In this document: in pieces, positions 41,478 through 56,953 of the stretch | Layout: every line of letters starts with the position of its first letter | Numbering within the stretch: position 1 is the first letter of the stretch | Origin: Ostrea edulis | Lineage: Eukaryota | Reading direction: 5' to 3' | NCBI RefSeq assembly: GCF_947568905.1 | Contig: NC_079167.1 | Coordinates: 13,826,001 to 13,890,000 of the forward strand | Length of the DNA: 64,000 nucleotides | Made by a program: the position numbers and the translations under genes | The notes under the pieces: generated by a model | What the model was told of the DNA's origin: nothing | The model's database searches: none | What the model saw: the letters and a program-made list of their open reading frames with translations, nothing else

Positions 41478-44400
41478 ATGGATATCAGAGCGAACATTTT
41501 TACAGTCCTGTTTATTTGTATTTTTGCCTCTTTTTCCAGACAGGTAAGATTATAATCTTACGAATATTTATTTATGAATTTTTGAATTATCATAGGAAGT
41601 ATCAAATAGTTAATTAAAAATTTCACTCAAATAAATTCTGAAAGTAATTCTTTGAAATTTAAATCCTTTTAGTAATATTATTTCAAGAAAATTCTAGTAA
41701 GTTTCTAAATGGTAAAAATGATCGTAATGAATTTTTTAAGATTGATACACCAAAACTATCGCGCTGCATCTACATGCAATAAAAATAAGTTCCGATAGAC
41801 ATTTCAGTTTTTAAAAGAAGACGAAATAATTATATTTTTGTGTGGATACAGGGGCATGTCTTTGTTGAAAGAACACGTTATGTAAACAAAACGGCATCTA
41901 TAGACATGCCAAATCTTGGCTGCAGTCACCATACATGTACATAATGTACCATGATTAAGGCTGATAAAATTCTCATGGGTTTAATCAGAGTCTATGTAGC
42001 CCTGAACTTTTATATTTTCGTGTTTTTAATGTTTTATGCAAATAAATGTAATATTCATTAATTTAGTTTAACACACATACACAAACAAATAACAGTATAT
42101 TGAAAGAAAATAAATACACAATGTACCTTTTAAAGATTATTTAAAACTCATTAATCAAATCAAGAAAACAAACTCAAATCATATTGTAATCTAATTTCGT
42201 GAATTCCTCTTGTTAAGTATGCTGTCGATATATAACAGTTAAACCTTTATTTTGGGGTCTATTTAGCGAGTTGTTGACTTTATTTTCTGTCTGAGTATCT
42301 TTGTCAACTGTGCTGCAAATCTGAATATAAAAACGACATTCCATTTAACCAAGATCCTATATGCAAAATGAATTATTTTTGTGGAATATAAACGACTTGT
42401 AGAAATTTTAAATCATCGTGGTTAAAAAACAGACAAACAAAATTAAGCTGAACCTTCCGTGGTTTTTTGTGATTCAGTTTCTGATTTACATGTCTTACAG
42501 GCGAGTCCTCGAGCGACATTGTTTATTAATCTGAAGGAATACAACAACACTAATAGTGAACTGTACAATGGAGACTGCTGTGATGGACCGGCCGCGTCAG
42601 ATAAGTGCAGCTCAGACCGATGTGATTACGTCATCAATATTTGTGTATTTGCCGTTGATAAGGAGTGAGTACACTTTATCAATACCAACAGCTCTAACTA
42701 CAAATTCAGGTTAGGTTGTACAACTGTTCTGGTTTATATTAATTACTGGTGACAATTTACATTAATAAAAAAGTTGGCATTAAAAGCATTTGAGAAAAAA
42801 AAATCATAAGGGTTTCACATCTGATTTAGGAAGTTTCTCTACAAACCGATAATTGAGAAGACGATACGAAAATAATTAGGCAATGAACAATATGCCAATT
42901 ATGACAAAATCTTCACACAGCAGTAATTAAGGAATTTAATATCACGATCCACTTATATAATATTCACGCTCCAACACTACCAGGAAGTAGGAACAAACAA
43001 GGTGATGTAATAAACCAAAAATGGTGTTATTAGAAGCATGTACAGAGATTGCCCTTGTTATTAGAAGCATGTACAGAGAATGCCGTTGTTTATGTCGCAT
43101 GGTTTTCACGGAACACACAGTTTATGTGTAATCTGGTAGAATTTGTTTTTCTTATATGAATCACTGCCTTGAAATCATTGTTTGGGCAAAACAGAACGAG
43201 GAAATGCTGTGTGTTCTAGTATTACCATATCAACTCATGAGGTAACGTACCAAAGGAAGAAAACAGCGGGACAGGTACATGTCTGCAGACAAAAACCGAT
43301 AACATAAACGTGAAAAAAAATCCAAACACTAGCACCGCTCATCTCATATTCATTCCCGAATTACTAAAGGAATGAATGTGTAAACAATGAAAGCATGTAC
43401 TTAATTTGTATCAGATTTACCTTTGCTTCCATAGTCGATATATACACATGTATATATCCATACTACACTGTACAAGCAACCTAGATGTTCATTCCTTCAA
43501 TCTACATTTTGTGTTATTTATAGACTTTTAGGGTATCTGATAAATGATTAACCCAAAAAAGTCTTCATCAACGAAAATTAAGATATCAAAAACCCTTGTT
43601 TTTCAACATACAAAATGATTCATCAGGAAATTTTTGAAAAACGATCACGTACTTTTATGAGGTATTACCTAATTGATTTAACATTGGAAACCTATGGGAA
43701 ATACATGTGTTTGACATGCAAAAAAAGAAACAAAGATCAATTTCGCGAAAAGGCTCTTGGTAAAAAGCTGTATAATAATAATAATAATACCAAATTTATA
43801 TAGCACTCTTTTCATACACTATGTACGCTCAAAGGTGCTTTACAATGCATATATACCTTACAACAGAATGTTATACACATAATACATAGAAAATAAATAA
43901 AACATTAAAAGCTGTACCTATCCTCATTGTACATATAAAACATGAAAACACAAGATACCATAAATATGCTAGATAAGAATAAACATCAGTTTCAGGGCGT
44001 ATTAAAATAATAATAATAATGAAATACACACACGCACACACAGCATATAATGTCTCAGGTATAATACATTAAAACATACAATTCTTCTTCTTTTTTTAAA
44101 CGTCTGTGTATCATAATCTAAAAAGAAAATTATGGTTCATTTGGCAAAATTAGTGATATCATGAATTCAATTGAAGAGAACAATAATTCAATTATGTCCT
44201 CAATTATTTAAGTTTATGATAATTTGGTACTCCATACTCCAAGTAACTAAGAAAATTCATAGAAAAATATCAATAAATAACAAATATTCTTTTAAAAAAG
44301 AAAATGTTTTGTAAAGGAAACAAAATCATGAAAATTTTACAAAACATCTTATATTCGGTTCACATCACAGACCGCAGTCTTTGCTTTCTTTAATGATTGA

Positions 44401-47400
44401 TGCTCAGAGTCATTTCTCAATTCTACTATGAGAAAAGTAATGAACACAGTCTCTTCTAATCGAATACGTGTGGTGCTAACCAATAGAATATTCTATACAG
44501 GTCTTGGTGCCAGTCCATACAGCTAAATGCCGACCGACCACCGGAGTTCGTCTTCAGTGACGAGGGAACTCAACAACAACCGATAAACACAGACTGGAAG
44601 GTGTGTAATATAAACACGGTCATGTAATTCGCATGCATTTGCACAATAAAACTATACTTAAGATATTAAACGAGCCATATACATTACAATTATACATTAC
44701 ATTTTTAAAAACTCAAATGAGGGATTTCGATCTAGTGAGCACAATTTGCCATGATATGTGATATATACAAAGTATAATACGGGACTTTCGAGATACGGAT
44801 CCACTCTGACTTTTATCGCGCGTTGAACGTAATTTGTAGGGCATGTCACTTCCGGATTACAATAACAACTAAGTAAACAAGCATGGAATACTTCATTTAC
44901 TATCAAATTCCTGCATTTAAATGCTATCTTCGAAAGTAAGGAATCACTACAACCATTTTATAGGAAAATGCATTTGATTAAATTATGTGAGTTGGCGAGG
45001 GAAATAAAAAAGGGAATATCTTGAGGATGTCGGTAAAACTTCACGCCTTGCATCCAATGATACGCATCTAAATACGCCTTTTCCCTTTCATCTAACTTAC
45101 TCCCAGGTATTAAGCACAAATAGTGACTTGGATCGTCATCATAGGACATCGCTATAGCTCTTTACGGGCCGACTGCTAGCGAAACACAATTTGTATCAAT
45201 GTCAACTTTGCCCTACAATTGGTTATTATCACGTGACCGTGGTGTATAAAAGTCAAATATAATCGGTCGTTCCGGCACATCATGAAAGTTCCGTATTACA
45301 TCCTGATTTTTATTTCGCATCAATTGCAACAAATAATCAACTTGTATGATGATTACTGAGGGTAAAATAAAATGGAGATTTCATTTTCTAACATTTAATC
45401 CTCGTTATTACTGCCAATTTTCTATATTAAAAAAATATGCTTGTGTTGTTATCGATAATAAATAACTGATTATGAAAATTCTTCAAACATCAAGAAATGT
45501 CAGAGTTGCATATATGTAGGGGACTGCCCGGGTTGACATCAACATCACTGATATAGATGGTCCTGACAAACAACAACTGGTCGACCAGTTCTCATTCAAT
45601 TACACAGACAAGGGAAGACGGACTCAGAAATTCCAGGAACTGGTTTTAAATGGTTCACGTCAGAGGCCATCAAGGTATCGCTCATAATCTTTTATGCTAC
45701 TTGTATTCATTTGATAAAGGTAAATACGTAACATACATTGATTTAATGAATTACAGGTACAAATTAGTTAGATGCAAAACATTTAAATATGACTTTTGTA
45801 TCTAAACACAAATTCACACTGAGGTTCTTATTTATATTTAAACACGAATTCACACTGAGGTTCTGACTAGTATTTGAACATGAATTCATCCTTATATTTA
45901 AACACGAATTCACACTGAGGTTCTAACATGTATTTGAACACAAATTCACACTGAGGTTCTTACTTGTATATGAACATGAATTCATACTGAGGTTCTAACT
46001 TGTATTTAAACACAAATTCACACTGAAGTTCTTACTTGTATTTGAACATGAATTCATACTGAGGTTCTTACTTGTATTTAAACACGAACTCACACTGAGG
46101 TTGTAACTTGTATCTAAACAGAAATTCACACTGAGGTTCTTGCCTGTATTCAAACATAAATTCTGACATTTCTTAATTTAAATCATCAATTCATTCTGCG
46201 ATACTTACTTGTATTTAAACTTAAAACTAGACCGAAATTATTGCTTGTATCCAAACATGAATTCAAGCTGAAGTTTTTGCATATATTCACACATGAAGTT
46301 AGACTGAGCTTGTATCAAACCTGAATTCAGATTGAAGCTGTCTATGGCAGTGCAGTGTGGGACTTATTACTACGGTGATGAGTGTTCCGTGTTCTGTATT
46401 CCCTCTGTGGATTGTAAGGGCCATTACTCGTGTGATGAGCAGACGGGCACTAAGATCTGTGACCAGGGCTGGGAGGGAACGAACTGCACCAAGCCTAAGG
46501 CCGGGGAAGGAAGCTGTCAAGGTGTGACACAGGGACATTGTGACAAGAAAACGTGACCAGTAAAGCCAATAAAGAAAGGCGAAAAACACGAACGATTTAA
46601 AAATCATCGTATTATAACATCTTGGTTTAGTAATGTTCAATTATATGCAGATGTTATTCCATCTCTTTTTCTTTACGACCAACGTATATATTCATCTTAG
46701 ATGATATTCAGTTTCGAATTTTCCAAAGTGAAAAATAAGAGTAAATGTTATTTTGAATGTGTATTGTAGAGCAGCGCTGTAAGAACGGTGGTACTTGTTC
46801 CATGAACAAGTTCAGTAACTCATCTAATAATGCCTTCTTCTGCTGCTGTCCGCCCGGATTCACTGGAAACGAGTGTGAAATAGACATCAACGAGTGTGAT
46901 CAGACGCCCTGCCAATATGGTGGCGTATGTCACAAAATTCCCGGAAGCTACATCTGTAACTGCCATCCGAGGTATTGATAGACAGACTGTCAAGCTTATA
47001 GTTGAAGTATCTTTTATTCAAAATGTTATGCATGGATAAAGGATTTGAAGAAAAAAACCCACCCAAGAATCAGTATTTTGAAAAATCTTTCCCCCTCTTT
47101 CTAGGAGGAGAGTGGTGAAAATATTAGAAGTTTGTTATATTTATTGTAATGTTGACGTGTATTCAAATGATTATGATTTTATTTGTCAGATATCGCGGAA
47201 TGAATTGTGAAATTCCAACGAAATGTGCTGATAATCCATGTAAAAATGGAAAATGTGAGGATGTGAAAGGAGGCACATTTGTGTGTCAGTGTGGTACATT
47301 TTTTTCGGGTATATTTTGTGAAAGCACAGTAACAACAACACCAAAAACAACCAGTACAAAAACTATAACGACAGATTCAACAACGAGCACAACCACCACG

Positions 47401-50400
47401 ACAACTCCAAAAACCACCACCACAACTCCAACCACCACCACCACCACAACTCCAACAACCACCACCACAACAACTCCAACCACAACAACAACTCCAACGA
47501 CAACCACCACCACCACAACTCCAACAACTACTATAAAAAGATCAACGCCCATGTCTGCTCTGACAACAGAAATATTGCCAACGACAACTTCTCTTCTAAA
47601 AACCACTGCTACTTCAGTGGAAATGACATCATCAATAAGGACTCCATCTGCTGGAGAGGTATCCTATAAATGTTCAGAAAAAAATGCATGCAGAAACAAT
47701 GGTAAATGTATTAATGATGCATGTCAGTGTCCAGTGGGATTCTCGGGAAAGCTTTGTCAGAGGGAAGTAATTGAATGTGAGGCTGACTCATGTTGGAATG
47801 GGGGATATTGTAATGATGCTGTAGGAAATTATTCTTGTGACTGTCCTAGTGGCTTTGTAGGGTTTAAGTGTGAAAAGCATGTTGGAAATACTACATTGTC
47901 ACCATCAACTAGTGCATGTGGGTTTTGTGGTAATGGTTCTTGTTCTATGTTGAATAATGGGACTGTTGTATGCATGTGTAGACCTGGATTTAGTGGGAAG
48001 ACTTGTACCCACTCACAAGATATGTGTCGTCCTTTTTCAGATGCTTTATGTTTTAGAGATAGTGAGTGCATGGTAAAGTCATTTCGCCCACATATGGAAG
48101 TTTGCCCAAATAGCTGGAAAGGTCCACTTTGCAGAAATGGATCCATACCCTTATCTCGAGACGGGGAATGTCCACGAATTGTATGCAAGAACGATGGACA
48201 CTGTTATAATGGGAAATGCTGTTGCAGACCAGGATATAAAGGCGAATTCTGCGAGGAGGAGGTGCTACTTTGTGATAGTAATCCATGTAAAAGTAACACA
48301 ACATGTATCAATCTATTCAATGATTTTATATGCAACTGCCCAGTGGGATTGACTGGTAAATTATGTGAAGTGTCTCTCGTACATCCGACATCTACATCTT
48401 CAACACATCGTGTCCAGCCAGTCTCAACTCAACATATTACGCCTCCTCTACCATCCACAACAACCACCAATTCAGCATCACTAGAAACAAGATCTATCGT
48501 CCTGACAAAAGATATACCCCGGGGAGGAACAACCGAATTATTGACCAAAGCAAAACCTGTATCGAACAAACCCATTACAACAGAGGTAAAAACAACCCAT
48601 TTGATGACCACCCCAACATCACCTATTGTGTCAAGTACTGCAGCAGCATTAGAAACGACAAATAAAATTCCATCAACTGAATCAGCAACTCCAACCACAT
48701 TAACCAAGGCTAGTCCTTTATCAACAGAAGAAATTACACAACGAATGAGCTCGGTGAGGAATAGCTGGGGGTATACACTTTTTAAAAAATTGAATTAAAG
48801 TAATCGATATTTTTAGTTATATGTTCAAATGCCATATGTAGTATATTTTGTTTTTGTTTATTCAATGATTTGTAATATTTTGAAGTAATTAATTAACCTA
48901 AAAGCTCACGGACTTACATGATAACGACGACGCGTTTGAGAAAACCCATTTCTCACAAATTGAAATGTACATTGAGAATGTTCACCCTGACAACATATTA
49001 TTGAATGCTTATTTTTGGGTAGGATGAACAATTTGGGAATTATAATGATAATTACTCGTTTGCTCATACTTTGAACCTCTTAATCTGATTGCTTGTCTTA
49101 AGCCAGCAATATTGTCTTAATGGATCCACAAAACGGAACGGAACCATAAAAACAACGTAAGGCTCTGGTCCAACAAGTGTTGCAGTAACTTACTATTTGC
49201 TCGCTTTATTAGTTGGGTCTGCTTTTTAAATAGAACCTGCATAAATGCATGGTAGAACTAAATGTAATTGCATGTAAATGAATGGTACCTCTACAAATAT
49301 AACAGATTGAATTAATGAGTTTCCTCTATCCACAACAGCAGAATATAACACATATTCAAGCTTTTTATTTCAGAAGCCCATGTTTTCGGTTGGTTTTTCG
49401 AAAGCGTCGCCAGCAAGTACTCTGTCTGTTTCTAAACAGAGATCGTCAACATCGACTTCTGAATCCAGTGACAGAATATCGTCGTCGTCAGCTACCGTAA
49501 CTGCAACGACAGTGCAATCAATCCCTCCTCACAATGGAGGGAACAACTCGGTGACGCTTAGTGGCAAAATTCCAGATAAGGACATTCCAATCGTACAAGA
49601 AGTGATGACAAACGCCGTCAAAAACACTTCGAAAGGTAAAATATGTATTCATTCACATGAATGAATTGTAAATAGAAAGTAAATCCTTTTTGGATCAGGT
49701 CCCTATCTACTGAACATGCGTTTTGTAAAATGTTGTAAAAATAAGTTGTTTTTTTATAGGCGAGAACTGCACGGATATTAATATCTTGGACACGGAATAT
49801 CTTTACAATATTTCTGGGTAAGAGGATATTATTGTAAAGTTTAATAAATATATCCATGTGTTGTATTTTTACAGCTAAAATACGAAAATATCGGTAAATT
49901 AATTTTTTTTTAGGATACTTTGTGAATTAGATTTCTGTATTCGTTGGGGCGCGCTTGATTTGTCTACACCGGTCACAAAGAGTACACTTTCCCGTAATCA
50001 AGTGCAAAGGTGTACACCACCTACACCCTATACATGGCATGTGTTGGTAAATGCACCGAAAACTTAAATATGATTGAAAAAAGGTGAGGCGGAAAATTTG
50101 CCGATTTATCCCTCAGTATGTTAAGTACATAATAGGACAATTCCAGTGTATTGTATGTAGTGATTTACTAGAGTTTAAAATGTATTTTAAAGAATAAATG
50201 TAAACGATGCTATTTCGTACAATCATCAAAAACAACTTGGCGCCAAAATTATTACCAGCATTATTATTTGCACTTTAATTACATTAAAATCGTGAACAAC
50301 ATAAAACAAGAAATCCTCTCCAAAAATCTCTTCAGCCGCTGTTACAGTTCAACGTCCATATTGAATATACACGTACACTGCAACCAACAGCAATTGATTA

Positions 50401-53400
50401 TAAGCCATAAGGTGTAAATTGACCAAACGCGCCCAAAGTGTACAGTATTGACAATTTTGTCATAACTTCCTGTTTCATAGTACTGTATGCAAACTTATTA
50501 TCGCCGCAGTTTAATTTTTGCTCTGTGTCAAAAACCGTGAAATTGAACCTGCAATAAATGTAATTGTAAAGAAAAAATAAGGAACGTATCAAAAGTTGTC
50601 TACTGTATTCATTTGATTTTGCTTTTGTTAGAAACGTCAATACGAAGGTGACCTATAACAGTTCAGATTGTCCAGACGCTTCAGACTTGCATAAGAATCC
50701 TAATCTCACGCAATCCATCAATAATCAGCTCGCTAACTCTGGTCAACTTAGTAGTCACGCCGTATACAACGGCAAAACGAAAGGACTGGGGCGGAGTTAC
50801 CACATCCCTCTGATCGGTTACGTGTACACTATCAACAGAAGAGGCATAAAAGACGCAATTAAGCGAGCATGGTCAAGTGCTGGTAGGAAATATTGGTTAT
50901 TTATTTATTTTGACTACGGATAACTCCGTCTACCAGATCAAGATATAGGGCTCACGGAAGTGTGAAGGGTCGACAGGGGATGCTTACTCCTCCTAGACAC
51001 CTGATCCCACCTCTGGTATATCCATGGGGTCCGTGTTTGCCCAACTCTCTATTTTGTATTGCTTATAGGAGTTATGAGATTGATCACTATTCGTTATGTT
51101 CACCTTTCATTACGGAATGCATTGTTACATTGCATCATCAAAGGAAAATGTATATTTGCTTTACATGTGATAGGAAACAAACAAGTTGATGTCCTCATCG
51201 TTGACGCTGCATACCAAATTGGACAGTATGGGTAAGGAACTTCATATCGTAAGAATTACTTATCAAAAATCAAACCAGAATATAGCCAATGGTTGCATCA
51301 GAATTGTCATTTTAGAAATAAAAAAATATACACACATATATCATGTTTATTTTCAGAATATACATAACGGATATGTCATATCTGGTTACTAGTGGCCTTG
51401 CATTTCTACAACCTAGACCGGAAAACATTCCGACAGAGAAGTCATTTGATAAGGAGTTCAAAACGGAATTTCCAGCTTTGCAGGTGTTGGTGTATTCTGG
51501 AAACGAGAGGTATAATTACGCCTCTGGATTACGCCTTTCTCTAAAGCAGAGGAAGAGATCCGCGCCCCTGTCAGTGGCTGATATACAGAGAAAAGCTCTT
51601 ACTGAGTGGGAAAACGTTATCAAAGGTAACGCATAACAAGAACGTGTACTATAATACTATCATCCAGCCTGAGCATTAGAGAAATGTAAATTTCACTTCT
51701 GTTATATTATTTGTGTTGTAGATGATGGGCGGTGTGCAAACCAGACCTGTAACATTGGATTAACTATTTCTCCTTTGGAGATCACAAAATCACGGTATTT
51801 CAAGACACATTCTATATTTAGGAAATAGAAGGATTTCAGAGTAGAGGGTTTCAATGAAACATTTCTGTTGCAGGTCATTCGATGTTGTTCTGTATCCAAC
51901 AATAAACAAATATCTCAACACAGAATCAACATTAATGACGGGGCTGAAAACCAGACTATCGCCTTATCATGAACGATGTAATGATTGCTCCAGATACCAT
52001 TATATAGATATAGTTGGGCGAATAAAACTCAGAGAGGAAAATGATATTGAAAATGCAACAAAAGTGGTTGTAGGTAAGTGGAAAGACTTTATTGATAAGC
52101 ATGCGTATTTTGATTCTTTCATTCCTGTGTAATCTAGATAATTACAATGTGTTTGTGTTTAATTAGGGGCTGTCGACACAAATTGGACGAAACTGTCTTT
52201 CGTTAGTGCTAAAAGGTAAACCTTCATCATTTTGATAATTTTCTTTTGGTTTGGACATTTTTTTAAGTGCTGCAAAAAATTAAAGAACTGTGTTTTTTTG
52301 TTTTTGTTTTAGTTCCTTGTCGACAAGACTATATTACTTACCCAGTAGTTTAAATGACACAATGGCGGGCTGGCCGCGCCCAAATATGGAGGGAAAGCTT
52401 GACTTGATTAATAGTTCTCTGAACAAGTTGAACCGAAAGCTAGCAATGCATAGAATGAGACGGCTGCATCAGTTAGTGATTATGGAAGCTGTGCCGACAT
52501 CAGAACAACACCATACCTTACACCTAATGGAAACAGCCTGGGCCACTGCAAACCAACGTAAGGAATCTGTACAGCTACACTACAGTCTTGTGATCTTTTG
52601 GTATTGATGACCATTAATTTGATTAAATTCCACGAATGTTTTGTTTTAACTGATAAATGTTTAACTTCATTTCAGATGTTCCTCAGAGAGATTTGACCAC
52701 TACCATCCAATCGTGGAACACAAATTATGTTTCCTTTCATGGGTAAGGAGAATTTCCTCTGTGCTGAAATGAATGAAATATGCCAATGTTATGCTGTGTT
52801 GTGGTTGATGTCTTTGATTATAACTTCTCCATTTAGAGATTCTGTGACACGAATAAAGTACACCATGGATATTCTGAATGCTGATTCCAGCATCGCAGCG
52901 TTATCCTCACCCAGTGTCGGGGTGATGGAGACGGTATTGAATTCCTCAGGTAAAACATACAGCGGCTGCAGAGCTTACCAGGTGAGAATGCTATGGATGA
53001 CGGACATGGAAGACCTCAACACAACATCAATAGAGAGCGCCGTGTCCAAAGCATGGATCAGTGCAAACAGCGGTAAGCATACATCCATTATACACGACAA
53101 CGTATATTTTCAACGTAATTATGATGTATCTTACTATGTTTGTTCTGAACATTTTAGGTTTTCAGCTCGTAATTCCTGCAACAGTTCTGAATTATGAAGC
53201 AGGATATGTTGCAGCGTCAGGGTAAGTAGATAGAGTCGTTCTCTGATGAAGAAATGTTCACTGCAGAAAAACAAATGCTCATAGATACGATTACCAGCAG
53301 TGGTCTTCATATTCAATAACAGCAATGATCTTCATATTCAATAACACCGATGGTCGTCATGTTGAATAACGCTTATTGTCTTCATACTAAATAACATCAA

Positions 53401-54005
53401 TGGTAAATTTGTTTTGGCAGAGAGAATGTTCGTATGTATACATATTTTATACAACCGAGGATAGGAAGCAAAAAAATCGATGAAGAAGATTTAGACGAGC
53501 CGTCCACTGTCGAATTAGAACAAGCACTATCAAAAACAGTACCTGGGTTACGCGCATTTCCTACTGCGTCCAAGAAATCAAATGGAACGGCATCAGATGG
53601 AACGGTATGTTCAACAAGACCCTGATTTGTTTTGACTACCGACACATTACTTACAGCATCTGATTTTAGGTGTATATTTCACAGATGCAATTCGTTATGG
53701 TTATCACTAATAAACCTCATCAAATGTGAAAGAAAAAAGATGTACTGTATAAAGGGTATTTTCAGCGGTAGGAAATTTTTGCGATTTAATCCATAAATGG
53801 TAGCAAATTATATTCTGCGTTTCCATTTTCTGCAGTTGCATTGTACCTTTTGCGACTGTAATTTTTGAGGATTTTTCCTATCCGCAGAAAATGGACGATC
53901 GCATAGAATACCCGTTATACGGGATGGGGTTTGCAAAATATATCTAAATGTATCATAAAAAGGTGCATATAGTATTTGAGATGAGACCGTTCATCAATGT
54001 TTTTG

Positions 54006-54038
<33 letters not shown>

Positions 54039-56953
54039 AGACGTTAAGCAAGATAGAATCAATCAATCAATAATTCGAGAATTGTTTACTTATATGGAAA
54101 CGGCGTCGAATGTAGACGAAGTGTTAGAAATGGTGACTAATGCATGGCGCTCAGGGCTGTAGCAGTACAACAGCTACGGCTTCGGGCAGTGGGGGTTCTT
54201 TAGCGTGCCACACCTACTATGACACGGGACTCGGGTCAAACGAAACAGCTGTTGTCCGAGGACACAGTCTATAACTGTTTTGTTATACACCTTCATTCTC
54301 TTGGGTTTTTTTTTTCTAGATGCACATGATTCTTTCATTTTGAACTTTTTAACAAGACAGTGTGATTGCGCACATTTATCAACGTGGGTTAGGTTTGATG
54401 TGTTACTGAGAGCGAGCGCCGTAACCACTAGTCGTGTTAGCGGTTATCCAGTCGTTAGTTGGCGTGAGAGACTACATATAGATCTATATCTATATATATT
54501 CTTGACAGGAATGGTGGGTGTACATAGTCATAGCTGTAGGATGTCTGGCGTTGGTTGTCATATTAACATCACTCTTGGTCACAGCACTGCGGGCTAGAAG
54601 GTATGTAACACCGCGTACTTAAAGTCTACCAAAGGTACATGTATATTTACATGTATTATAATTTGTTAATGATTAACGTAGCATTTCATTTGAATGATAT
54701 AAAGTTACATCCTTTACAAAAGAGTGGCAAATCGTCATAGTGTTTCAAATGAGAGTACGTCATTGGTGCAAAAATGAAATCCGATTGACGGTGTTGCCCC
54801 TTTACTGATTCGACATTTGTCTGGATTAGCTCTATGGAGCGCCAAATTAACATAAACTCAAATAATTGAAGATATCTTCAATTATTTGAAGATATCATCA
54901 ATTCATTTGATGCGCACAACAATTGAATTAAAGATCTCTTCAAATAATTAATGATATCTTCAATTCTGAATTATTTGCGCGCATTAATTGAATTGATGAG
55001 AGCATTAATTCTTCAGCTGATTTGATGCGCGATTTAATTGAATTAATGATCTCTTCAAATGAATTAATGATATCAACAATTGAATTGATGCGCGCTACAA
55101 TTCAATTGAAGAGAGCAATAATTCATATAATGCGCGCATTAAATCAATTGATGAGAACAATAATTGAATTGATGCGCGCATTAATTCATTTGATGAGAGC
55201 AATAATTGATTTAATGCGCGCATTAATTCAATTATTGCTCTCTTCAATTGAATTAATGATATCTTTAATTCATTTGAAGAGAGCAATAATTCTTTTAGAG
55301 AGAGCAACTATATAATTAAAGATATTTTCAATTCAACATATCCACAATTGAATTAATGATATCTTTAATTGAATTGTTGCTCTCTTTAAAAGAATTGATG
55401 CGCGCATTAATTCCTTATATAAAAGCATTGTAAATGATTTAAAGATATCTTCAATTGAATTAAAGAGATCATCAAATTATTTATACCGAGCTCTAAATTA
55501 ATTATTGCGAGCAATATTTCTACTAAATTGATGCTCTCATCAAATGAATTGAAGAGAGCAATAATTGAATTAATGCGCGCATCAAATCTATTATTGCTCT
55601 CATTAATTGAATTAATGCGCGCATCAATTGAATTGAAGAGAGCAATAATTGAATTAATGCGCGCATTAAATCAATTATTGCTCTCATTAATTCAATTGAT
55701 GCGCGCATTAACTCAATTGATGAGAGCAATAATTGAATTGAAGCGCGCATTAATTCATTTGATGAGAGCGATAATTGATTTAATGCACGCATTAATTCAA
55801 TTAAAGAGAGCAATAATTGAATTGATGATATCTTCAAATAATTGAAGATATCTTCAATTATTTAAGTTTATGTTAATTTGACGCTCCATATAGCTCAGTG
55901 AACTAAGACGGTGGGCTTTTATTCTGTCCTCAGTTATAATATATGTTCAGCATTCAGATTGTGATCGGTTTTATACTCAAAAGACATCACGTATAATCAC
56001 CAGGGGTCAGTGTCCTTCAGAATGCCGATCGCAACGACCTCGGGAAAGGTTGTTTTTTCGCTTGCCGGAAAGGCCCTAGAATGTGCATATGTGGAATGAA
56101 AGACAAAGGAATTAATCTTGAATGTTACACCCAAACGTGTGATGTCGCACAGAGAACGCGGAATAACTCCATCAAATATCTGGTATAAATAGAACCATGT
56201 AATGAATTAAAACAATTTTCCAATCACTTTCTAATATAAATATATAAACATTTACGACAAGACCTTGTAACACAATGATGTTTGATCTTTTGACCTTGGA
56301 ATTTGAAACCTCAGACCTGTTTGATATCTCCTGAACTATTTAAGGTAGGGCTTTCATATTTTGTATATATATGTAGATTCTTTATGGCAAGACCTTTAAA
56401 CTTTGTTGTTTGACCTTGTGATTGTGACATTGAACAACGGCAGGACCAAGATGGTTTAGCTGAGCGATGTAGCCCATAGACCTCTTGTTATTGACTTCGT
56501 ACAAAAATTTGAATTATTTGCTACATGAGCCAATCTACACCTCACTGTATTGCACATCTCTTACTGGCTTTATTTATGTCAAATTTGATCGGTGTGGTAT
56601 TCCTCCGTACTCTACACAAATAAAAAAAATCCCTTGGTATTCATTGTATCATCAAGCCAATAACATTTGTTTTATCCATATATGATCCATTTCCTCATGC
56701 ATTTTACCATTTTGCATTGCTTTTATTCAATAAGTTGCTATTATCAAATTCTATTATTAGTCATCGTCAGTCAAGAACGCTAAAACAGGACCCAAAACAA
56801 ATGAATGGATTTGACAAAGAACACTTCTCTAAAGAGCCCGTAATGGAGAAAAATTCCAATGGCCTTTACACCGTGGAGGACGAGGACACAGACTATTCCA
56901 AAACAACATACATAGTGAACAACGCAGCAGATACCGAGGCGTATCAGGAATGA
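41478..56953 (+). CDS. Delta/Serrate-like (MNNL-DSL-EGF) type I membrane protein with mucin stalk and six repeated juxtamembrane modules, ~1580 aa
   Basis: 22 phase-consistent GT-AG exons: 41478-41543, 42501-42664, 44501-44600, 45520-45674, 46331-46521, 46770-46971, 47190-48753, 49374-49635, 49760-49817, 50632-50882, 51174-51231, 51357-51625, 51722-51794, 51874-52073, 52167-52215, 52313-52557, 52676-52742, 52837-53072, 53158-53221, 53421-53604, 54509-54600, 56761-56953 (4743 nt). Signal peptide; LKEYNN...LYNGDCC (MNNL); CGTYYYGDECSVFC...GHYSC...C..GWEGTNC (DSL); ~9 EGF; TM WWVYIVIAVGCLALVVILTSLLVTAL. Confidence 0.85.
45800..46270. repeat. 36-bp minisatellite in intron 4 of the DSL-like gene
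   Basis: Unit ~AAACACGAATTCACACTGAGGTTCTTACTTGTATTT, about 10-12 degenerate copies. Confidence 0.85.
50905..51109 (+). mobile_element. 3' UTR remnant of the Penelope-like family seen at 10585 and 28000
   Basis: GATCAAGATATAGGGCTCACGG...GATGCTTACTCCTCCTAG...CTGATCCCACCTCTGG...TTCACCTTTCAT. Confidence 0.65.
53745..53922. mobile_element. Small MITE, Tc1/mariner-like
   Basis: TA then CTGTATAAAGGGTATT at the left end; AATACCCGTTATACGG at the right end (imperfect TIR). Confidence 0.45.
53975..54250. mobile_element. SINE fragments
   Basis: GGACGTCTCCATATGAGTGAAAAATTCTCG...(AATC)n tail on the plus strand, and a GCGCTCAGGGC...GTGCCACACCTACT block matching the SINE body. Confidence 0.5.
54833..55890. 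mobile_element. Non-autonomous foldback DNA transposon with 6-bp TSD (IS3EU-like), copy 2
   Basis: TATGGAG...CTCCATA termini, TAGCTC direct repeat at 54827-54832 and 55891-55896, same family as 4797-5775. Confidence 0.88.
56270..56487 (+). mobile_element. Helentron-like 3' fragment
   Basis: TTTGACCTT motifs and the end GAGCGATGTAGCCCATAGACCTCTTGTT. Confidence 0.45.

What the first reader, a model, noticed from the sequence alone, without database searches (positions are those of the whole stretch)
41478..56953. Giant Notch-ligand-like protein with mucin stalk and six novel membrane-proximal modules
Seen: the canonical ligand head (MNNL then DSL), but followed by EGFs split by a Thr-rich tract, a second S/T region, ~600 aa of repeated non-EGF modules, a TM helix and a ~65-aa tail with several Tyr and Lys. 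Canonical Delta and Jagged/Serrate have only EGFs (plus a Cys-rich vWC-like domain in Jagged) before the TM. I know no described DSL protein of this architecture. It may be a lophotrochozoan long-reach ligand, a Notch antagonist or an adhesion/mucosal receptor (inference). This is the best candidate here for an undescribed system.
Basis: partly seen in the sequence, partly recalled or inferred. Interest (0 to 1): 0.82.

Follow-up and report, generated by a model that had tools for sequence, protein, structure and literature searches.

The report
Delta-like head on mucin/SEA-like stalk
This oyster gene encodes a membrane protein with a divergent Notch-ligand tip on a sugar-coated stalk and six SEA-like domains; the design is conserved in oysters and pearl oysters, I found no paper describing it, and its function is untested.

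Summary
A 22-exon GT-AG model (41478-56953, + strand) gives 1,580 aa. In order it has a signal peptide, a partial MNNL/C2 match, a DSL domain, 3 EGFs, a 129-aa Thr-rich tract, 6 EGFs, an S/T-rich region, about 616 aa of non-EGF modules, a TM helix and a 67-aa tail.

It aligns end to end with annotated "uncharacterized" proteins of Saccostrea, Crassostrea and Pinctada. The two-gene reading is therefore unlikely.

The modules are new as a sequence family, with no Pfam or PDB sequence match. They are probably not a new fold. AlphaFold gives β-α-β-β-α-β domains whose best structural matches are membrane-adjacent SEA-like domains (PCDH15 MAD12, MUC16 SEA), all at Z below 8. The true domains straddle the exon pairs. 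Only three of the six fold confidently.

The head is not canonical. Three of the five conserved Jagged1 DSL-face residues differ, and an extra Cys is present. These changes are conserved in the orthologues.

The module/TM/tail part also occurs in abalone and chiton proteins. A much larger paralogue with the same design lies on the same chromosome.

My reading is a lineage-specific fusion of a Delta-like head with a mollusc module cassette. Notch binding is untested. I rate it a new variant of a known kind.

The parts
41478..41543 (+). Exon 1: start codon and signal peptide (22 aa), phase-0 donor
   Evidence: The N-terminus aligns with the S. cucullata and C. angulata orthologues.
42501..42664 (+). 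Exon 2: start of the MNNL/C2-like domain
   Evidence: Pfam PF07657 at 31 bits, profile positions 6-47 of 157. tblastn with P0011 gives 78% identity.
44501..44600 (+). Exon 3: middle of the C2-like region (no Pfam match)
   Evidence: Splice and frame search. tblastn with P0011 residues 80-110.
45520..45674 (+). Exon 4: end of the C2-like region
   Evidence: tblastn with P0011 gives 61% identity.
46331..46521 (+). Exon 5: DSL domain with a divergent receptor face (F/I/S/D/K at Jagged1 199/201/203/205/207) and a seventh Cys
   Evidence: Pfam PF01414 at 51.6 bits. Alignments to DLL1 and Jagged1 chains.
46770..46971 (+). Exon 6: EGF1 and calcium-binding-type EGF2
   Evidence: Pfam EGF and EGF_CA. 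Exon borders.
47190..48753 (+). Exon 7: EGF3; Thr-rich mucin tract (about 47284-47670); EGF4-9 (about 47689-48369); start of the second S/T-rich region
   Evidence: 556-aa open frame. Pfam EGF families. S/T content. Tandem repeats. Contigs of a related species cover 48063-48684.
49154..49312 (+). Relic in intron 7 of an EGF-like segment that is coding in the orthologues; here it is broken by a frameshift and two stop codons
   Evidence: tblastn of the P0004 segment.
49374..49635 (+). Exon 8: Ser-rich linker, then beta1-alpha1 of module domain D0 (from about 49542)
   Evidence: Frame-consistent acceptor and donor. Orthologue alignment. D0 folds at pLDDT 67-86.
49760..50882 (+). Exons 9 (49760-49817) and 10 (50632-50882): rest of D0 and start of D1. 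Intron 10, just downstream of exon 10, holds a highly repeated element at about 50907-51110.
51174..51625 (+). Exons 11 (51174-51231) and 12 (51357-51625): rest of D1 and start of D2
   Evidence: Acceptor 51357 was chosen because the orthologues encode the extra 20 aa. A contig of the related species covers 51374-51509.
51722..52073 (+). Exons 13 (51722-51794) and 14 (51874-52073): rest of D2 and start of D3
52167..52557 (+). Exons 15 (52167-52215) and 16 (52313-52557): rest of D3 and start of D4
   Evidence: A spliced contig (X2 record 23) ends exactly at 52557.
52676..53072 (+). Exons 17 (52676-52742) and 18 (52837-53072): rest of D4 and start of D5 (CxC motif)
   Evidence: Spliced contigs X2 record 23 and X1 record 8 match the exon borders. 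The exon 18 query found the orthologues.
53158..53604 (+). Exons 19 (53158-53221) and 20 (53421-53604): rest of D5 and the juxtamembrane linker
   Evidence: The D4-D5 model has pLDDT 82.
54509..54600 (+). Exon 21: transmembrane helix (aa 1488-1513) and basic stop-transfer residues
   Evidence: tblastn with P0011 gives 65% identity.
56761..56953 (+). Exon 22: cytoplasmic tail and stop codon. This is the most conserved part: 87-92% identity to oyster orthologues and 62% to Pinctada.

Best explanation
This is one gene for a type I membrane glycoprotein that joins two parts of different origin.

(a) The head is a divergent Delta-type unit: a C2-like domain, a DSL domain and EGFs.

(b) The rest is a mollusc-specific cassette: tandem SEA-like (β-α-β-β-α-β) domains, a TM helix and a conserved short tail.

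Between them lie two O-glycosylation-type S/T-rich tracts and six more EGFs.

Shown here:
- The architecture.
- Its conservation in Ostreidae and Pinctada.
- The SEA-like fold of D0, D4 and D5.
- The absence of the Gly-Ser autoproteolysis motif at the β2-β3 turns.
- The conserved but altered DSL face.
- The presence of the cassette in an abalone protein whose N-terminus is unresolved, and of the module in a chiton fragment.

Inferred mechanism:
- The mucin tracts and the row of uncleaved SEA-like domains act as a stiff, glycosylated spacer. My rough estimate is that this holds the DSL tip on the order of 100 nm from the membrane.
- The tip binds an EGF-repeat partner (Notch or a Notch-like protein) through a changed interface. 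The protein would then act as a non-canonical, modulatory ligand or adhesion molecule rather than a standard Delta.
- Trafficking or signalling runs through the cassette's own tail, not through a Delta/Jagged-type tail.

My odds: architecture and origin about 0.85; this particular mode of action about 0.35-0.4.
For: Gene model:
- The 22 exons are frame-consistent.
- The model aligns end to end with P0011 (S. cucullata), which is full length (signal peptide to tail). It aligns over the modelled portions of N-terminally incomplete P0004 and P0013, of isoform P0012 (which lacks EGF4-9), and of partial P0014.
- Spliced contigs of a related species join exons 14/15-16-17-18-19 at my borders.

Domains:
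- Pfam finds MNNL, DSL and EGF.

Module fold:
- AlphaFold of D4-D5 has pLDDT 82.4 and shows two β-α-β-β-α-β units.
- D0 shows the same pattern at pLDDT 67-86.
- The top VIA matches are PCDH15 MAD12 (Z 7.0-7.7), MUC16 SEA (6.1, 5.8), the Gpr126 SEA region (6.1), CDH23 MAD28 (6.0), a TMPRSS SEA (5.3) and dystroglycan (5.3).

DSL face:
- Jagged1 positions 199/201/203/205/207 read F/I/S/D/K here, against F/R/R/D/F in Jagged1 and DLL1.
- Of the three best-scoring DSL copies in the same genome, two read F/R/R/D/F and one I/R/R/D/F.
- The importance of these residues is taken from PMC3415683.
- The altered motif is the same in all the oyster orthologues and similar in Pinctada.

Cassette found elsewhere:
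- Haliotis P0007 and P0015 align through D4-D5, the TM helix and the tail.
- A chiton protein, P0006, matches the module.

Paralogue with the same design:
- It lies at G000:C4:64947513-64993830 and has MNNL, DSL, a mucin exon, 16 or more module exons and a TM exon.

Conservation:
- The tail is 87-92% identical among oysters, against 59-66% for the modules.
Against: - No RNA contig crosses exon 7 to exon 8. No RNA run of this species was found.
- The 5' part of ancestral exon 8 is degenerate here, so splicing at 49374 is assumed.
- All structural Z-scores are below 8, which the tool warns may reflect only a common arrangement. Foldseek and Atlas gave only generic ferredoxin-like matches.
- D1-D3 folded at very low confidence. 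D2 and D3 show no profile similarity to the other domains.
- Nothing here measures binding, glycosylation, cleavage or expression.
- Changed face residues do not prove loss of Notch binding.
Confidence: 0.5

Rival explanations
1. It is a canonical, activating Notch ligand with a long reach. The head binds Notch EGF11-12 as Delta does. Endocytosis of the ligand pulls on Notch. The long stalk only extends the range across mucus or glycocalyx.
For: - MNNL, DSL and EGFs are in the canonical order, above Pfam cut-offs.
- The best PDB sequence matches are DLL1 and Jagged1.
- F199, D205 and the GHY motif are kept.
- The tail has six Lys that could be ubiquitinated.
Against: - R201, R203 and F207 of the conserved face are I, S and K, and an extra Cys sits beside them. 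Two of the three best-scoring DSL copies of the same genome keep the full face and the third differs only at F199.
- MNNL matches only positions 6-47 of 157.
- The tail belongs to the module cassette, which is shared with the abalone proteins. It gave no Delta/Jagged-type Pfam match; no Delta/Jagged tail was aligned directly.
- A long, compliant stalk is an odd lever for force transmission. This last point is inference.
Confidence: 0.2
2. It is mainly a membrane mucin, adhesion or sensor protein of the module family. The conserved tail carries the function. The DSL/EGF tip is a borrowed binding module for a non-Notch partner, or is close to vestigial.
For: - The tail is the most conserved part.
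- The module/TM/tail cassette occurs in abalone models with no DSL in the annotated part, and the module occurs in a chiton fragment.
- The layout of PTS tracts, SEA-like domains, a TM helix and a short tail matches that of transmembrane mucins.
Against: - The head is under constraint. It is 67-81% identical among oysters, and the altered DSL motif is conserved out to Pinctada.
- The abalone model is N-terminally incomplete: further module exons lie upstream of its annotated start. A head there cannot be excluded.
- A paralogue keeps the same head-plus-cassette design.
Confidence: 0.25
3. It is an artefact or a decaying gene. Either two neighbouring genes were read as one, or the gene is a pseudogene in this species because part of ancestral exon 8 is broken.
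For: - No RNA contig spans 48753 to 49374.
- The orthologous EGF-like segment at 49154-49312 carries a frameshift and stop codons.
Against: - Gene models in five other species join both halves. The Pinctada one is a partial model that also runs on into downstream PAN-type sequence.
- All 22 exons are open and phase-compatible.
- The second half has no start codon or signal peptide of its own.
- The same arrangement occurs in a paralogue.
- The remainder is conserved at 60-66% identity with no disruption.
Confidence: 0.05

Closest known systems
Delta/Delta-like and Jagged/Serrate (DSL-family Notch ligands)
   Same: It is a type I membrane protein with an N-terminal C2-like (MNNL) region, a DSL domain and then EGF repeats. 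Its best sequence matches among solved structures are DLL1 and Jagged1.
   Different: - The DSL face is F/I/S/D/K instead of F/R/R/D/F, and there is a seventh Cys.
- MNNL is matched only in part.
- The EGFs are interrupted by a 129-aa Thr-rich tract.
- About 616 aa of SEA-like modules lie before the TM helix.
- The tail gave no Delta/Jagged-type match and lies in a cassette shared with abalone proteins.
Bivalve DSL expansions (Delta2, DSL-only tandem genes) described in PMC8166818
   Same: It is a lineage-specific diversification of DSL genes in molluscs. That paper mentions a branch with 'DSL, EGF and other domains'.
   Different: That study defined Delta by MNLL+DSL+EGF and discarded unexpected architectures. 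In the passages I read it describes no mucin tract or SEA-like module design.
Transmembrane mucins with SEA domains (MUC16 tandem SEA; MUC1, MUC3/12/17)
   Same: - PTS-type S/T-rich tracts encoded by degenerate tandem repeats.
- Membrane-proximal β-α-β-β-α-β domains in tandem.
- A single TM helix and a short tail.
- MUC16 SEA structures match at Z 5.8-6.1.
   Different: - No sequence match to Pfam SEA or to any PDB chain.
- No Gly-Ser cleavage motif.
- Mucins have no DSL head. That last statement is from my own knowledge.
Membrane-adjacent domains MAD12 of protocadherin-15 and MAD28 of cadherin-23
   Same: These are the best structural matches (Z 7.0-7.7 and 6.0, with 84-91 residues aligned). 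They occupy the same position next to the TM helix.
   Different: They are single domains, not six in tandem. Sequence identity is 4-10%. A Z below 8 is fold-level evidence only.
Haliotis asinina XP_067679697, H. rubra XP_046566801 and Liolophura sinensis XP_064605714 (all uncharacterized)
   Same: The abalone proteins share the module family (CxC motif, an 'A..AW' helix), the TM helix and a related tail motif. The chiton fragment shares the module only.
   Different: No DSL or EGF lies in the annotated parts. The abalone model is N-terminally incomplete and the chiton model is a 134-aa fragment.

Membership tests
DSL-family Notch ligand (Delta/Jagged) | DSL domain | tested here: met
   PF01414 scores 51.6 bits against a cut-off of 24.2 on exon 5. 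It aligns to DLL1 and Jagged1 chains at E 6e-11 and 2e-10.
DSL-family Notch ligand (Delta/Jagged) | N-terminal MNNL/C2 domain | tested here: inconclusive
   PF07657 scores 25.7-31 bits, above its cut-off of 22.5, but covers only profile positions 6-47 (to 48 in one orthologue) of 157. The remaining 90 or so residues have the right length but no match.
DSL-family Notch ligand (Delta/Jagged) | Conserved receptor-binding face of DSL (Jagged1 F199, R201, R203, D205, F207; PMC3415683) | tested here: not met
   The residues here are F, I, S, D, K, with an extra Cys at position 206. Of the three best-scoring DSL copies in the same genome, two read F/R/R/D/F and one I/R/R/D/F.
DSL-family Notch ligand (Delta/Jagged) | EGF repeats, a single TM helix, type I topology | tested here: met
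   Nine EGF-like repeats (six found by signature, the rest counted by eye), a signal peptide, and a TM helix at aa 1488-1513.
DSL-family Notch ligand (Delta/Jagged) | Binds and activates or cis-inhibits Notch; tail recognised by Mindbomb/Neuralized | not testable with these tools
The tail aligns with abalone module proteins, and no Delta/Jagged-type Pfam match appeared. No Delta/Jagged tail was aligned directly.
SEA domain / SEA-like (ferredoxin-type) extracellular domain | β-α-β-β-α-β fold | tested here: met
   This is met for D4 and D5 (pLDDT 82.4) and for D0 as far as α2, with no β4 resolved (pLDDT 67-86). D1-D3 were modelled at low confidence only.
SEA domain / SEA-like (ferredoxin-type) extracellular domain | Sequence membership in Pfam SEA, or similarity to solved SEA chains | tested here: not met
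   Pfam gave no SEA (PF01390) match on the modules; the sub-threshold rows there are unrelated families. Profile A1 against PDB sequences gave 0 matches at E up to 10.
SEA domain / SEA-like (ferredoxin-type) extracellular domain | Structural similarity to SEA/MAD domains clearly above background | tested here: inconclusive
   SEA and MAD entries are enriched among the top 25 matches at Z 5.3-7.7. All are below 8 and are mixed with PheRS, Cas and ACT domains.
SEA domain / SEA-like (ferredoxin-type) extracellular domain | Autoproteolysis motif (Gly followed by Ser/Thr/Cys) at the β2-β3 turn | tested here: not met
   The six turns read SGN, YGI, KSR, KSS, HGD and SGE. None has Gly followed by Ser, Thr or Cys (sequence, read against the strands).
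Transmembrane mucin | Long Pro/Thr/Ser tract encoded by tandem repeats | tested here: met
   aa 325-453 is 60% S/T and 8% Pro. TRF finds arrays with periods of 18-45 nt at 47388-47528. Glycosylation itself is not testable here.

The most novel reading that the evidence does not exclude
A mollusc-wide extracellular module family that has no Pfam model (SEA-like domains with a CxC motif, plus a conserved TM helix and tail) captured a Delta-type head in pteriomorph bivalves. This produced a small family of mucin-tethered DSL proteins, one of which has more than 16 modules. These proteins would carry out Notch-type signalling or its inhibition over unusually long distances at mucosal or shell-forming surfaces. 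The row of SEA-like domains would act as a mechanical element in force-dependent receptor activation.
Probability: 0.15. Interest if true: 0.8.

Novelty: new variant of a known kind. Interest (0 to 1): 0.55.

Why it matters
Notch ligands are thought to be structurally uniform: a head, EGFs, a TM helix and a tail. Their activity depends on pulling force across a short cell-cell gap. A conserved ligand-like protein with mucin tracts and six SEA-like domains between tip and membrane tests that picture.

Either the DSL head has been reused for something else, or Notch-type recognition can work from a long glycosylated tether.

The work also defines a module family with no Pfam model. It is present in bivalves, an abalone and a chiton, and comes with a strongly conserved short tail. 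The design is directly testable with binding and reporter assays in oyster or heterologous cells.

The finding is lineage-specific and has no functional data, so its present weight is moderate.

Tried and rejected
- RNA evidence for this species. Two run searches listed no RNA run. Runs X9 and X10, which I hoped were RNA, cover introns and are DNA. Only X1 and X2, from a related species, gave spliced contigs. None of them crosses exon 7 to exon 8.
- Internal repeat detection by blastp among exon translations was nearly blank. A simple alignment of exon-pair 'modules' was poor. The domain register had to be shifted.
- AlphaFold of D0-D3 gave a mean pLDDT of 43. Only D0 is usable.
- Foldseek against PDB and the Atlas shape search returned only generic tandem ferredoxin-like proteins such as ACT, Cas6, RRM and SecDF.
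- The Atlas feature search gave no usable hit.
- Profile A1 against PDB sequences gave nothing.
- The word search with the head region found only the orthologues. The word search with the abalone protein found only its congener.
- The genome search with the tail exon found no second copy.
- Paralogue A at C4:64.84 Mb has MNNL and DSL exons, but I could not show modules downstream of them.
- Weak Pfam rows for the TM/tail region (Cadherin_C_2, TMEM132_C, below cut-off) were rejected as TM-driven.
- A furin-like 'RKR' in D2 was rejected. It has no Arg at P4 and is not conserved in the orthologues.
- No complex prediction was sent, because I do not claim binding.
Full report
**What is there**

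The window is AT-rich eukaryotic DNA. DNA runs labelled 'oyster metagenome', and runs of one coded organism, hold the stretch almost completely. It therefore comes from an oyster. I did not establish the species. The genome is 895 Mb in 52 contigs.

Open frames on the + strand between 41.4 and 57.0 kb carry an MNNL-like piece, a DSL domain, EGFs and a 556-aa open frame with a Thr-rich run.

**The gene model**

I built the model from splice sites and frame continuity. It has 22 exons, all GT-AG, and no internal stop. Alignment to orthologues moved the acceptor of exon 12 from 51417 to 51357. The final product is 1,580 aa.

The domain order is as follows:
- A signal peptide.
- A C2-like region. 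Pfam MNNL scores 31 bits but covers only profile positions 6-47 of 157.
- A DSL domain (51.6 bits).
- EGF1-3.
- A Thr-rich tract at aa 325-453, 60% S/T, encoded by degenerate 18-45-nt repeats.
- EGF4-9.
- An S/T-rich region at about aa 690-870.
- A non-EGF region at aa 871-1486.
- A TM helix at aa 1488-1513.
- A 67-aa tail with 4 Tyr and 6 Lys.

The model has 26 N-glycosylation sequons.

**One gene or two**

I ran a whole-library HMMER search with exon 18, which is 78 aa of the non-EGF region. It found a 1,466-aa Saccostrea echinata protein at 62% identity and a 2,038-aa Haliotis asinina protein at 35%.

A word search from the Saccostrea protein added four more:
- S. cucullata XP_062570839 (1,637 aa, full length).
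- C. angulata / C. gigas LOC105326748 isoform X3 (1,202 aa; it lacks EGF4-9).
- C. virginica LOC111119087.
- Pinctada imbricata KAK3090337.

All are named 'uncharacterized' or 'hypothetical'. UniProt auto-names the Pinctada entry 'Delta-like protein'.

My model aligns with these proteins from signal peptide to stop codon. Identity figures:

| Region | Oyster orthologues | Pinctada |
|---|---|---|
| Whole protein | 60-66% | – |
| Head (MNNL-DSL) | 67-81% | – |
| Modules | 59-66% | – |
| Tail | 87-92% | 62% |

Read evidence is partial:
- Runs X9 and X10 proved to be DNA.
- Contigs from a related species (X1, X2) lie on exons plus a few repeated intronic stretches, and are spliced exactly at my borders.
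- X2 record 23 joins 52311-52557 to 52838-53015 with 68 nt in between. That gap equals exon 17 plus one base.
- X1 record 8 is exon 18 flanked by non-collinear sequence.
- No contig spans exon 7 to exon 8.

That junction is the weakest link in the model. The orthologues encode an extra EGF-like segment there. Its counterpart in this window (49154-49312) has a frameshift and two stops. This species apparently uses an acceptor inside the ancestral exon.

**The modules**

Exon pairs (a short exon with phases 1 to 2, a long exon with phases 2 to 1) recur six times.

The structural domains are offset from the exon pairs. Each domain consists of:
- β1-α1 at the end of one long exon;
- β2 in the next short exon;
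- β3-α2-β4 at the start of the following long exon.

I first saw this register in the abalone sequence. AlphaFold then confirmed it:
- D4-D5 of the S. echinata orthologue (7-row alignment) gives pLDDT 82.4 and two β-α-β-β-α-β units.
- D0-D3 gives a mean pLDDT of only 43. D0 alone is confident and shows the same pattern.

Profile-profile comparison links some of the domains:
- D1-D5, E 1e-4.
- D4-D5, E 5e-4.
- D0-D1, E 3.5e-3.
- D0-D4 and D1-D4, weaker.
- D2 and D3, no signal.

No Pfam SEA match and no PDB sequence match covers the modules.

By structure, Foldseek returns only generic tandem ferredoxin-like proteins. The exhaustive VIA search puts extracellular membrane-adjacent domains on top:

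| Match | Z |
|---|---|
| PCDH15 MAD12 | 7.0-7.7 |
| SorCS2 | 6.7 |
| CELSR1 | 6.4 |
| Gpr126 SEA region | 6.1 |
| MUC16 SEA | 6.1 and 5.8 |
| CDH23 MAD28 | 6.0 |
| TMPRSS SEA | 5.3 |
| Dystroglycan | 5.3 |
| Notch2 HD | 4.8 |

All are below Z 8 and are interleaved with unrelated ferredoxin-like folds. Most rows align to D4 only. This is fold-level evidence.

None of the six β2-β3 turns has Gly followed by Ser, Thr or Cys. SEA-type self-cleavage is therefore not expected.

**The head**

Aligned to Jagged1 and DLL1 chains, the residues at Jagged1 199/201/203/205/207 are F/I/S/D/K. A seventh Cys sits at position 206. Those five residues form the conserved face needed for trans-activation and cis-inhibition (PMC3415683).

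Of the three best-scoring DSL copies in the same genome, two read F/R/R/D/F and one I/R/R/D/F. The altered motif is identical in all the oyster orthologues and similar in Pinctada. It is therefore conserved rather than decayed.

**Relatives of the cassette**

The abalone proteins align through D4-D5 (including an invariant CxC), the TM helix and a related tail motif. Their TM/tail reaches the Pfam TMEM154 cut-off (30.6 and 32.1 bits against 30.3). The oyster tails do not.

The abalone model is incomplete at its 5' end: more module exons lie upstream of its annotated start. Whether it has a DSL head is unknown.

A chiton fragment, XP_064605714, carries the same module.

**Paralogues in this genome**

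Two more DSL copies share the extra Cys. One of them heads a roughly 46-kb locus at C4:64947513-64993830, all on one strand. That locus has:
- MNNL-like and DSL exons;
- a Cys-rich exon;
- a 196-aa mucin exon (46% S/T);
- at least 16 mutually similar module exons;
- a TM exon.

Profile A1 hits one of its exons at E 4e-4.

**Interpretation**

The best-supported account is a lineage-specific fusion of a Delta-type head with a mollusc module/TM/tail cassette. The product is a DSL-tipped membrane mucin.

How it acts is inference. I favour a non-canonical binding or modulatory role over canonical activation, for two reasons: the receptor face has changed, and the tail is the cassette's own. No experiment bears on this.

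The literature searches found no description of this design. The lophotrochozoan Notch survey notes DSL expansions in bivalves but filtered out unexpected architectures.

Noticed in passing
window 49154-49312: Relic of an EGF-like coding segment that is intact in the Saccostrea and Crassostrea orthologues. Here it lies in intron 7 with a frameshift and two stop codons.
   Followed up: partly
window 50907-51110 (intron 10): A very highly repeated element. Summed contig depth is about 10^5 in all four runs, with many rearranged joints. It is probably a short transposable element.
   Followed up: no
window 55018-55292 and 55526-55827 (intron 21): Two arrays of a 21/42/84-nt tandem repeat built around a palindromic AATTAATGCGCGCATTAATT core. 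Both arrays are open in both strands.
   Followed up: no
window 45796-46163 (intron 4): A 36-nt tandem repeat with 10.6 copies, which gives spurious ORFs on the minus strand.
   Followed up: no
G000:C4:64947513-64993830 (loci L026-L030): A large paralogue on the same chromosome with the same design: MNNL-like exon, DSL with the extra Cys, a Cys-rich exon, a 196-aa mucin exon, 16 or more module exons and a TM exon at 64993736. A second DSL copy with the extra Cys lies at C4:64844891.
   Followed up: partly
L033 1-10000 (Haliotis asinina, upstream of XP_067679697): More module-type exons and a long tandem repeat lie upstream of the annotated start, and a separate 435-aa gene is called there. The abalone gene model looks N-terminally truncated or split.
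   Followed up: partly
P0007:1930-2038 and P0015:1408-1516: The TM helix plus tail of the abalone relatives just reaches the Pfam TMEM154 gathering score (30.6 and 32.1 bits against 30.3). The oyster tails score 15 bits or less. This is a possible distant link of the cassette's tail to vertebrate TMEM154.
   Followed up: partly
P0012 (C. angulata / C. gigas isoform X3) against window exon 7: The annotated isoform lacks EGF4-9, which here lie inside one 1.56-kb exon. This suggests alternative splicing within that exon in Crassostrea.
   Followed up: no
P0014 (Pinctada imbricata KAK3090337), residues about 570-1689: After the conserved tail the model runs on into PAN/apple-type repeats. It is probably a fusion of two neighbouring genes in that annotation.
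   Followed up: no
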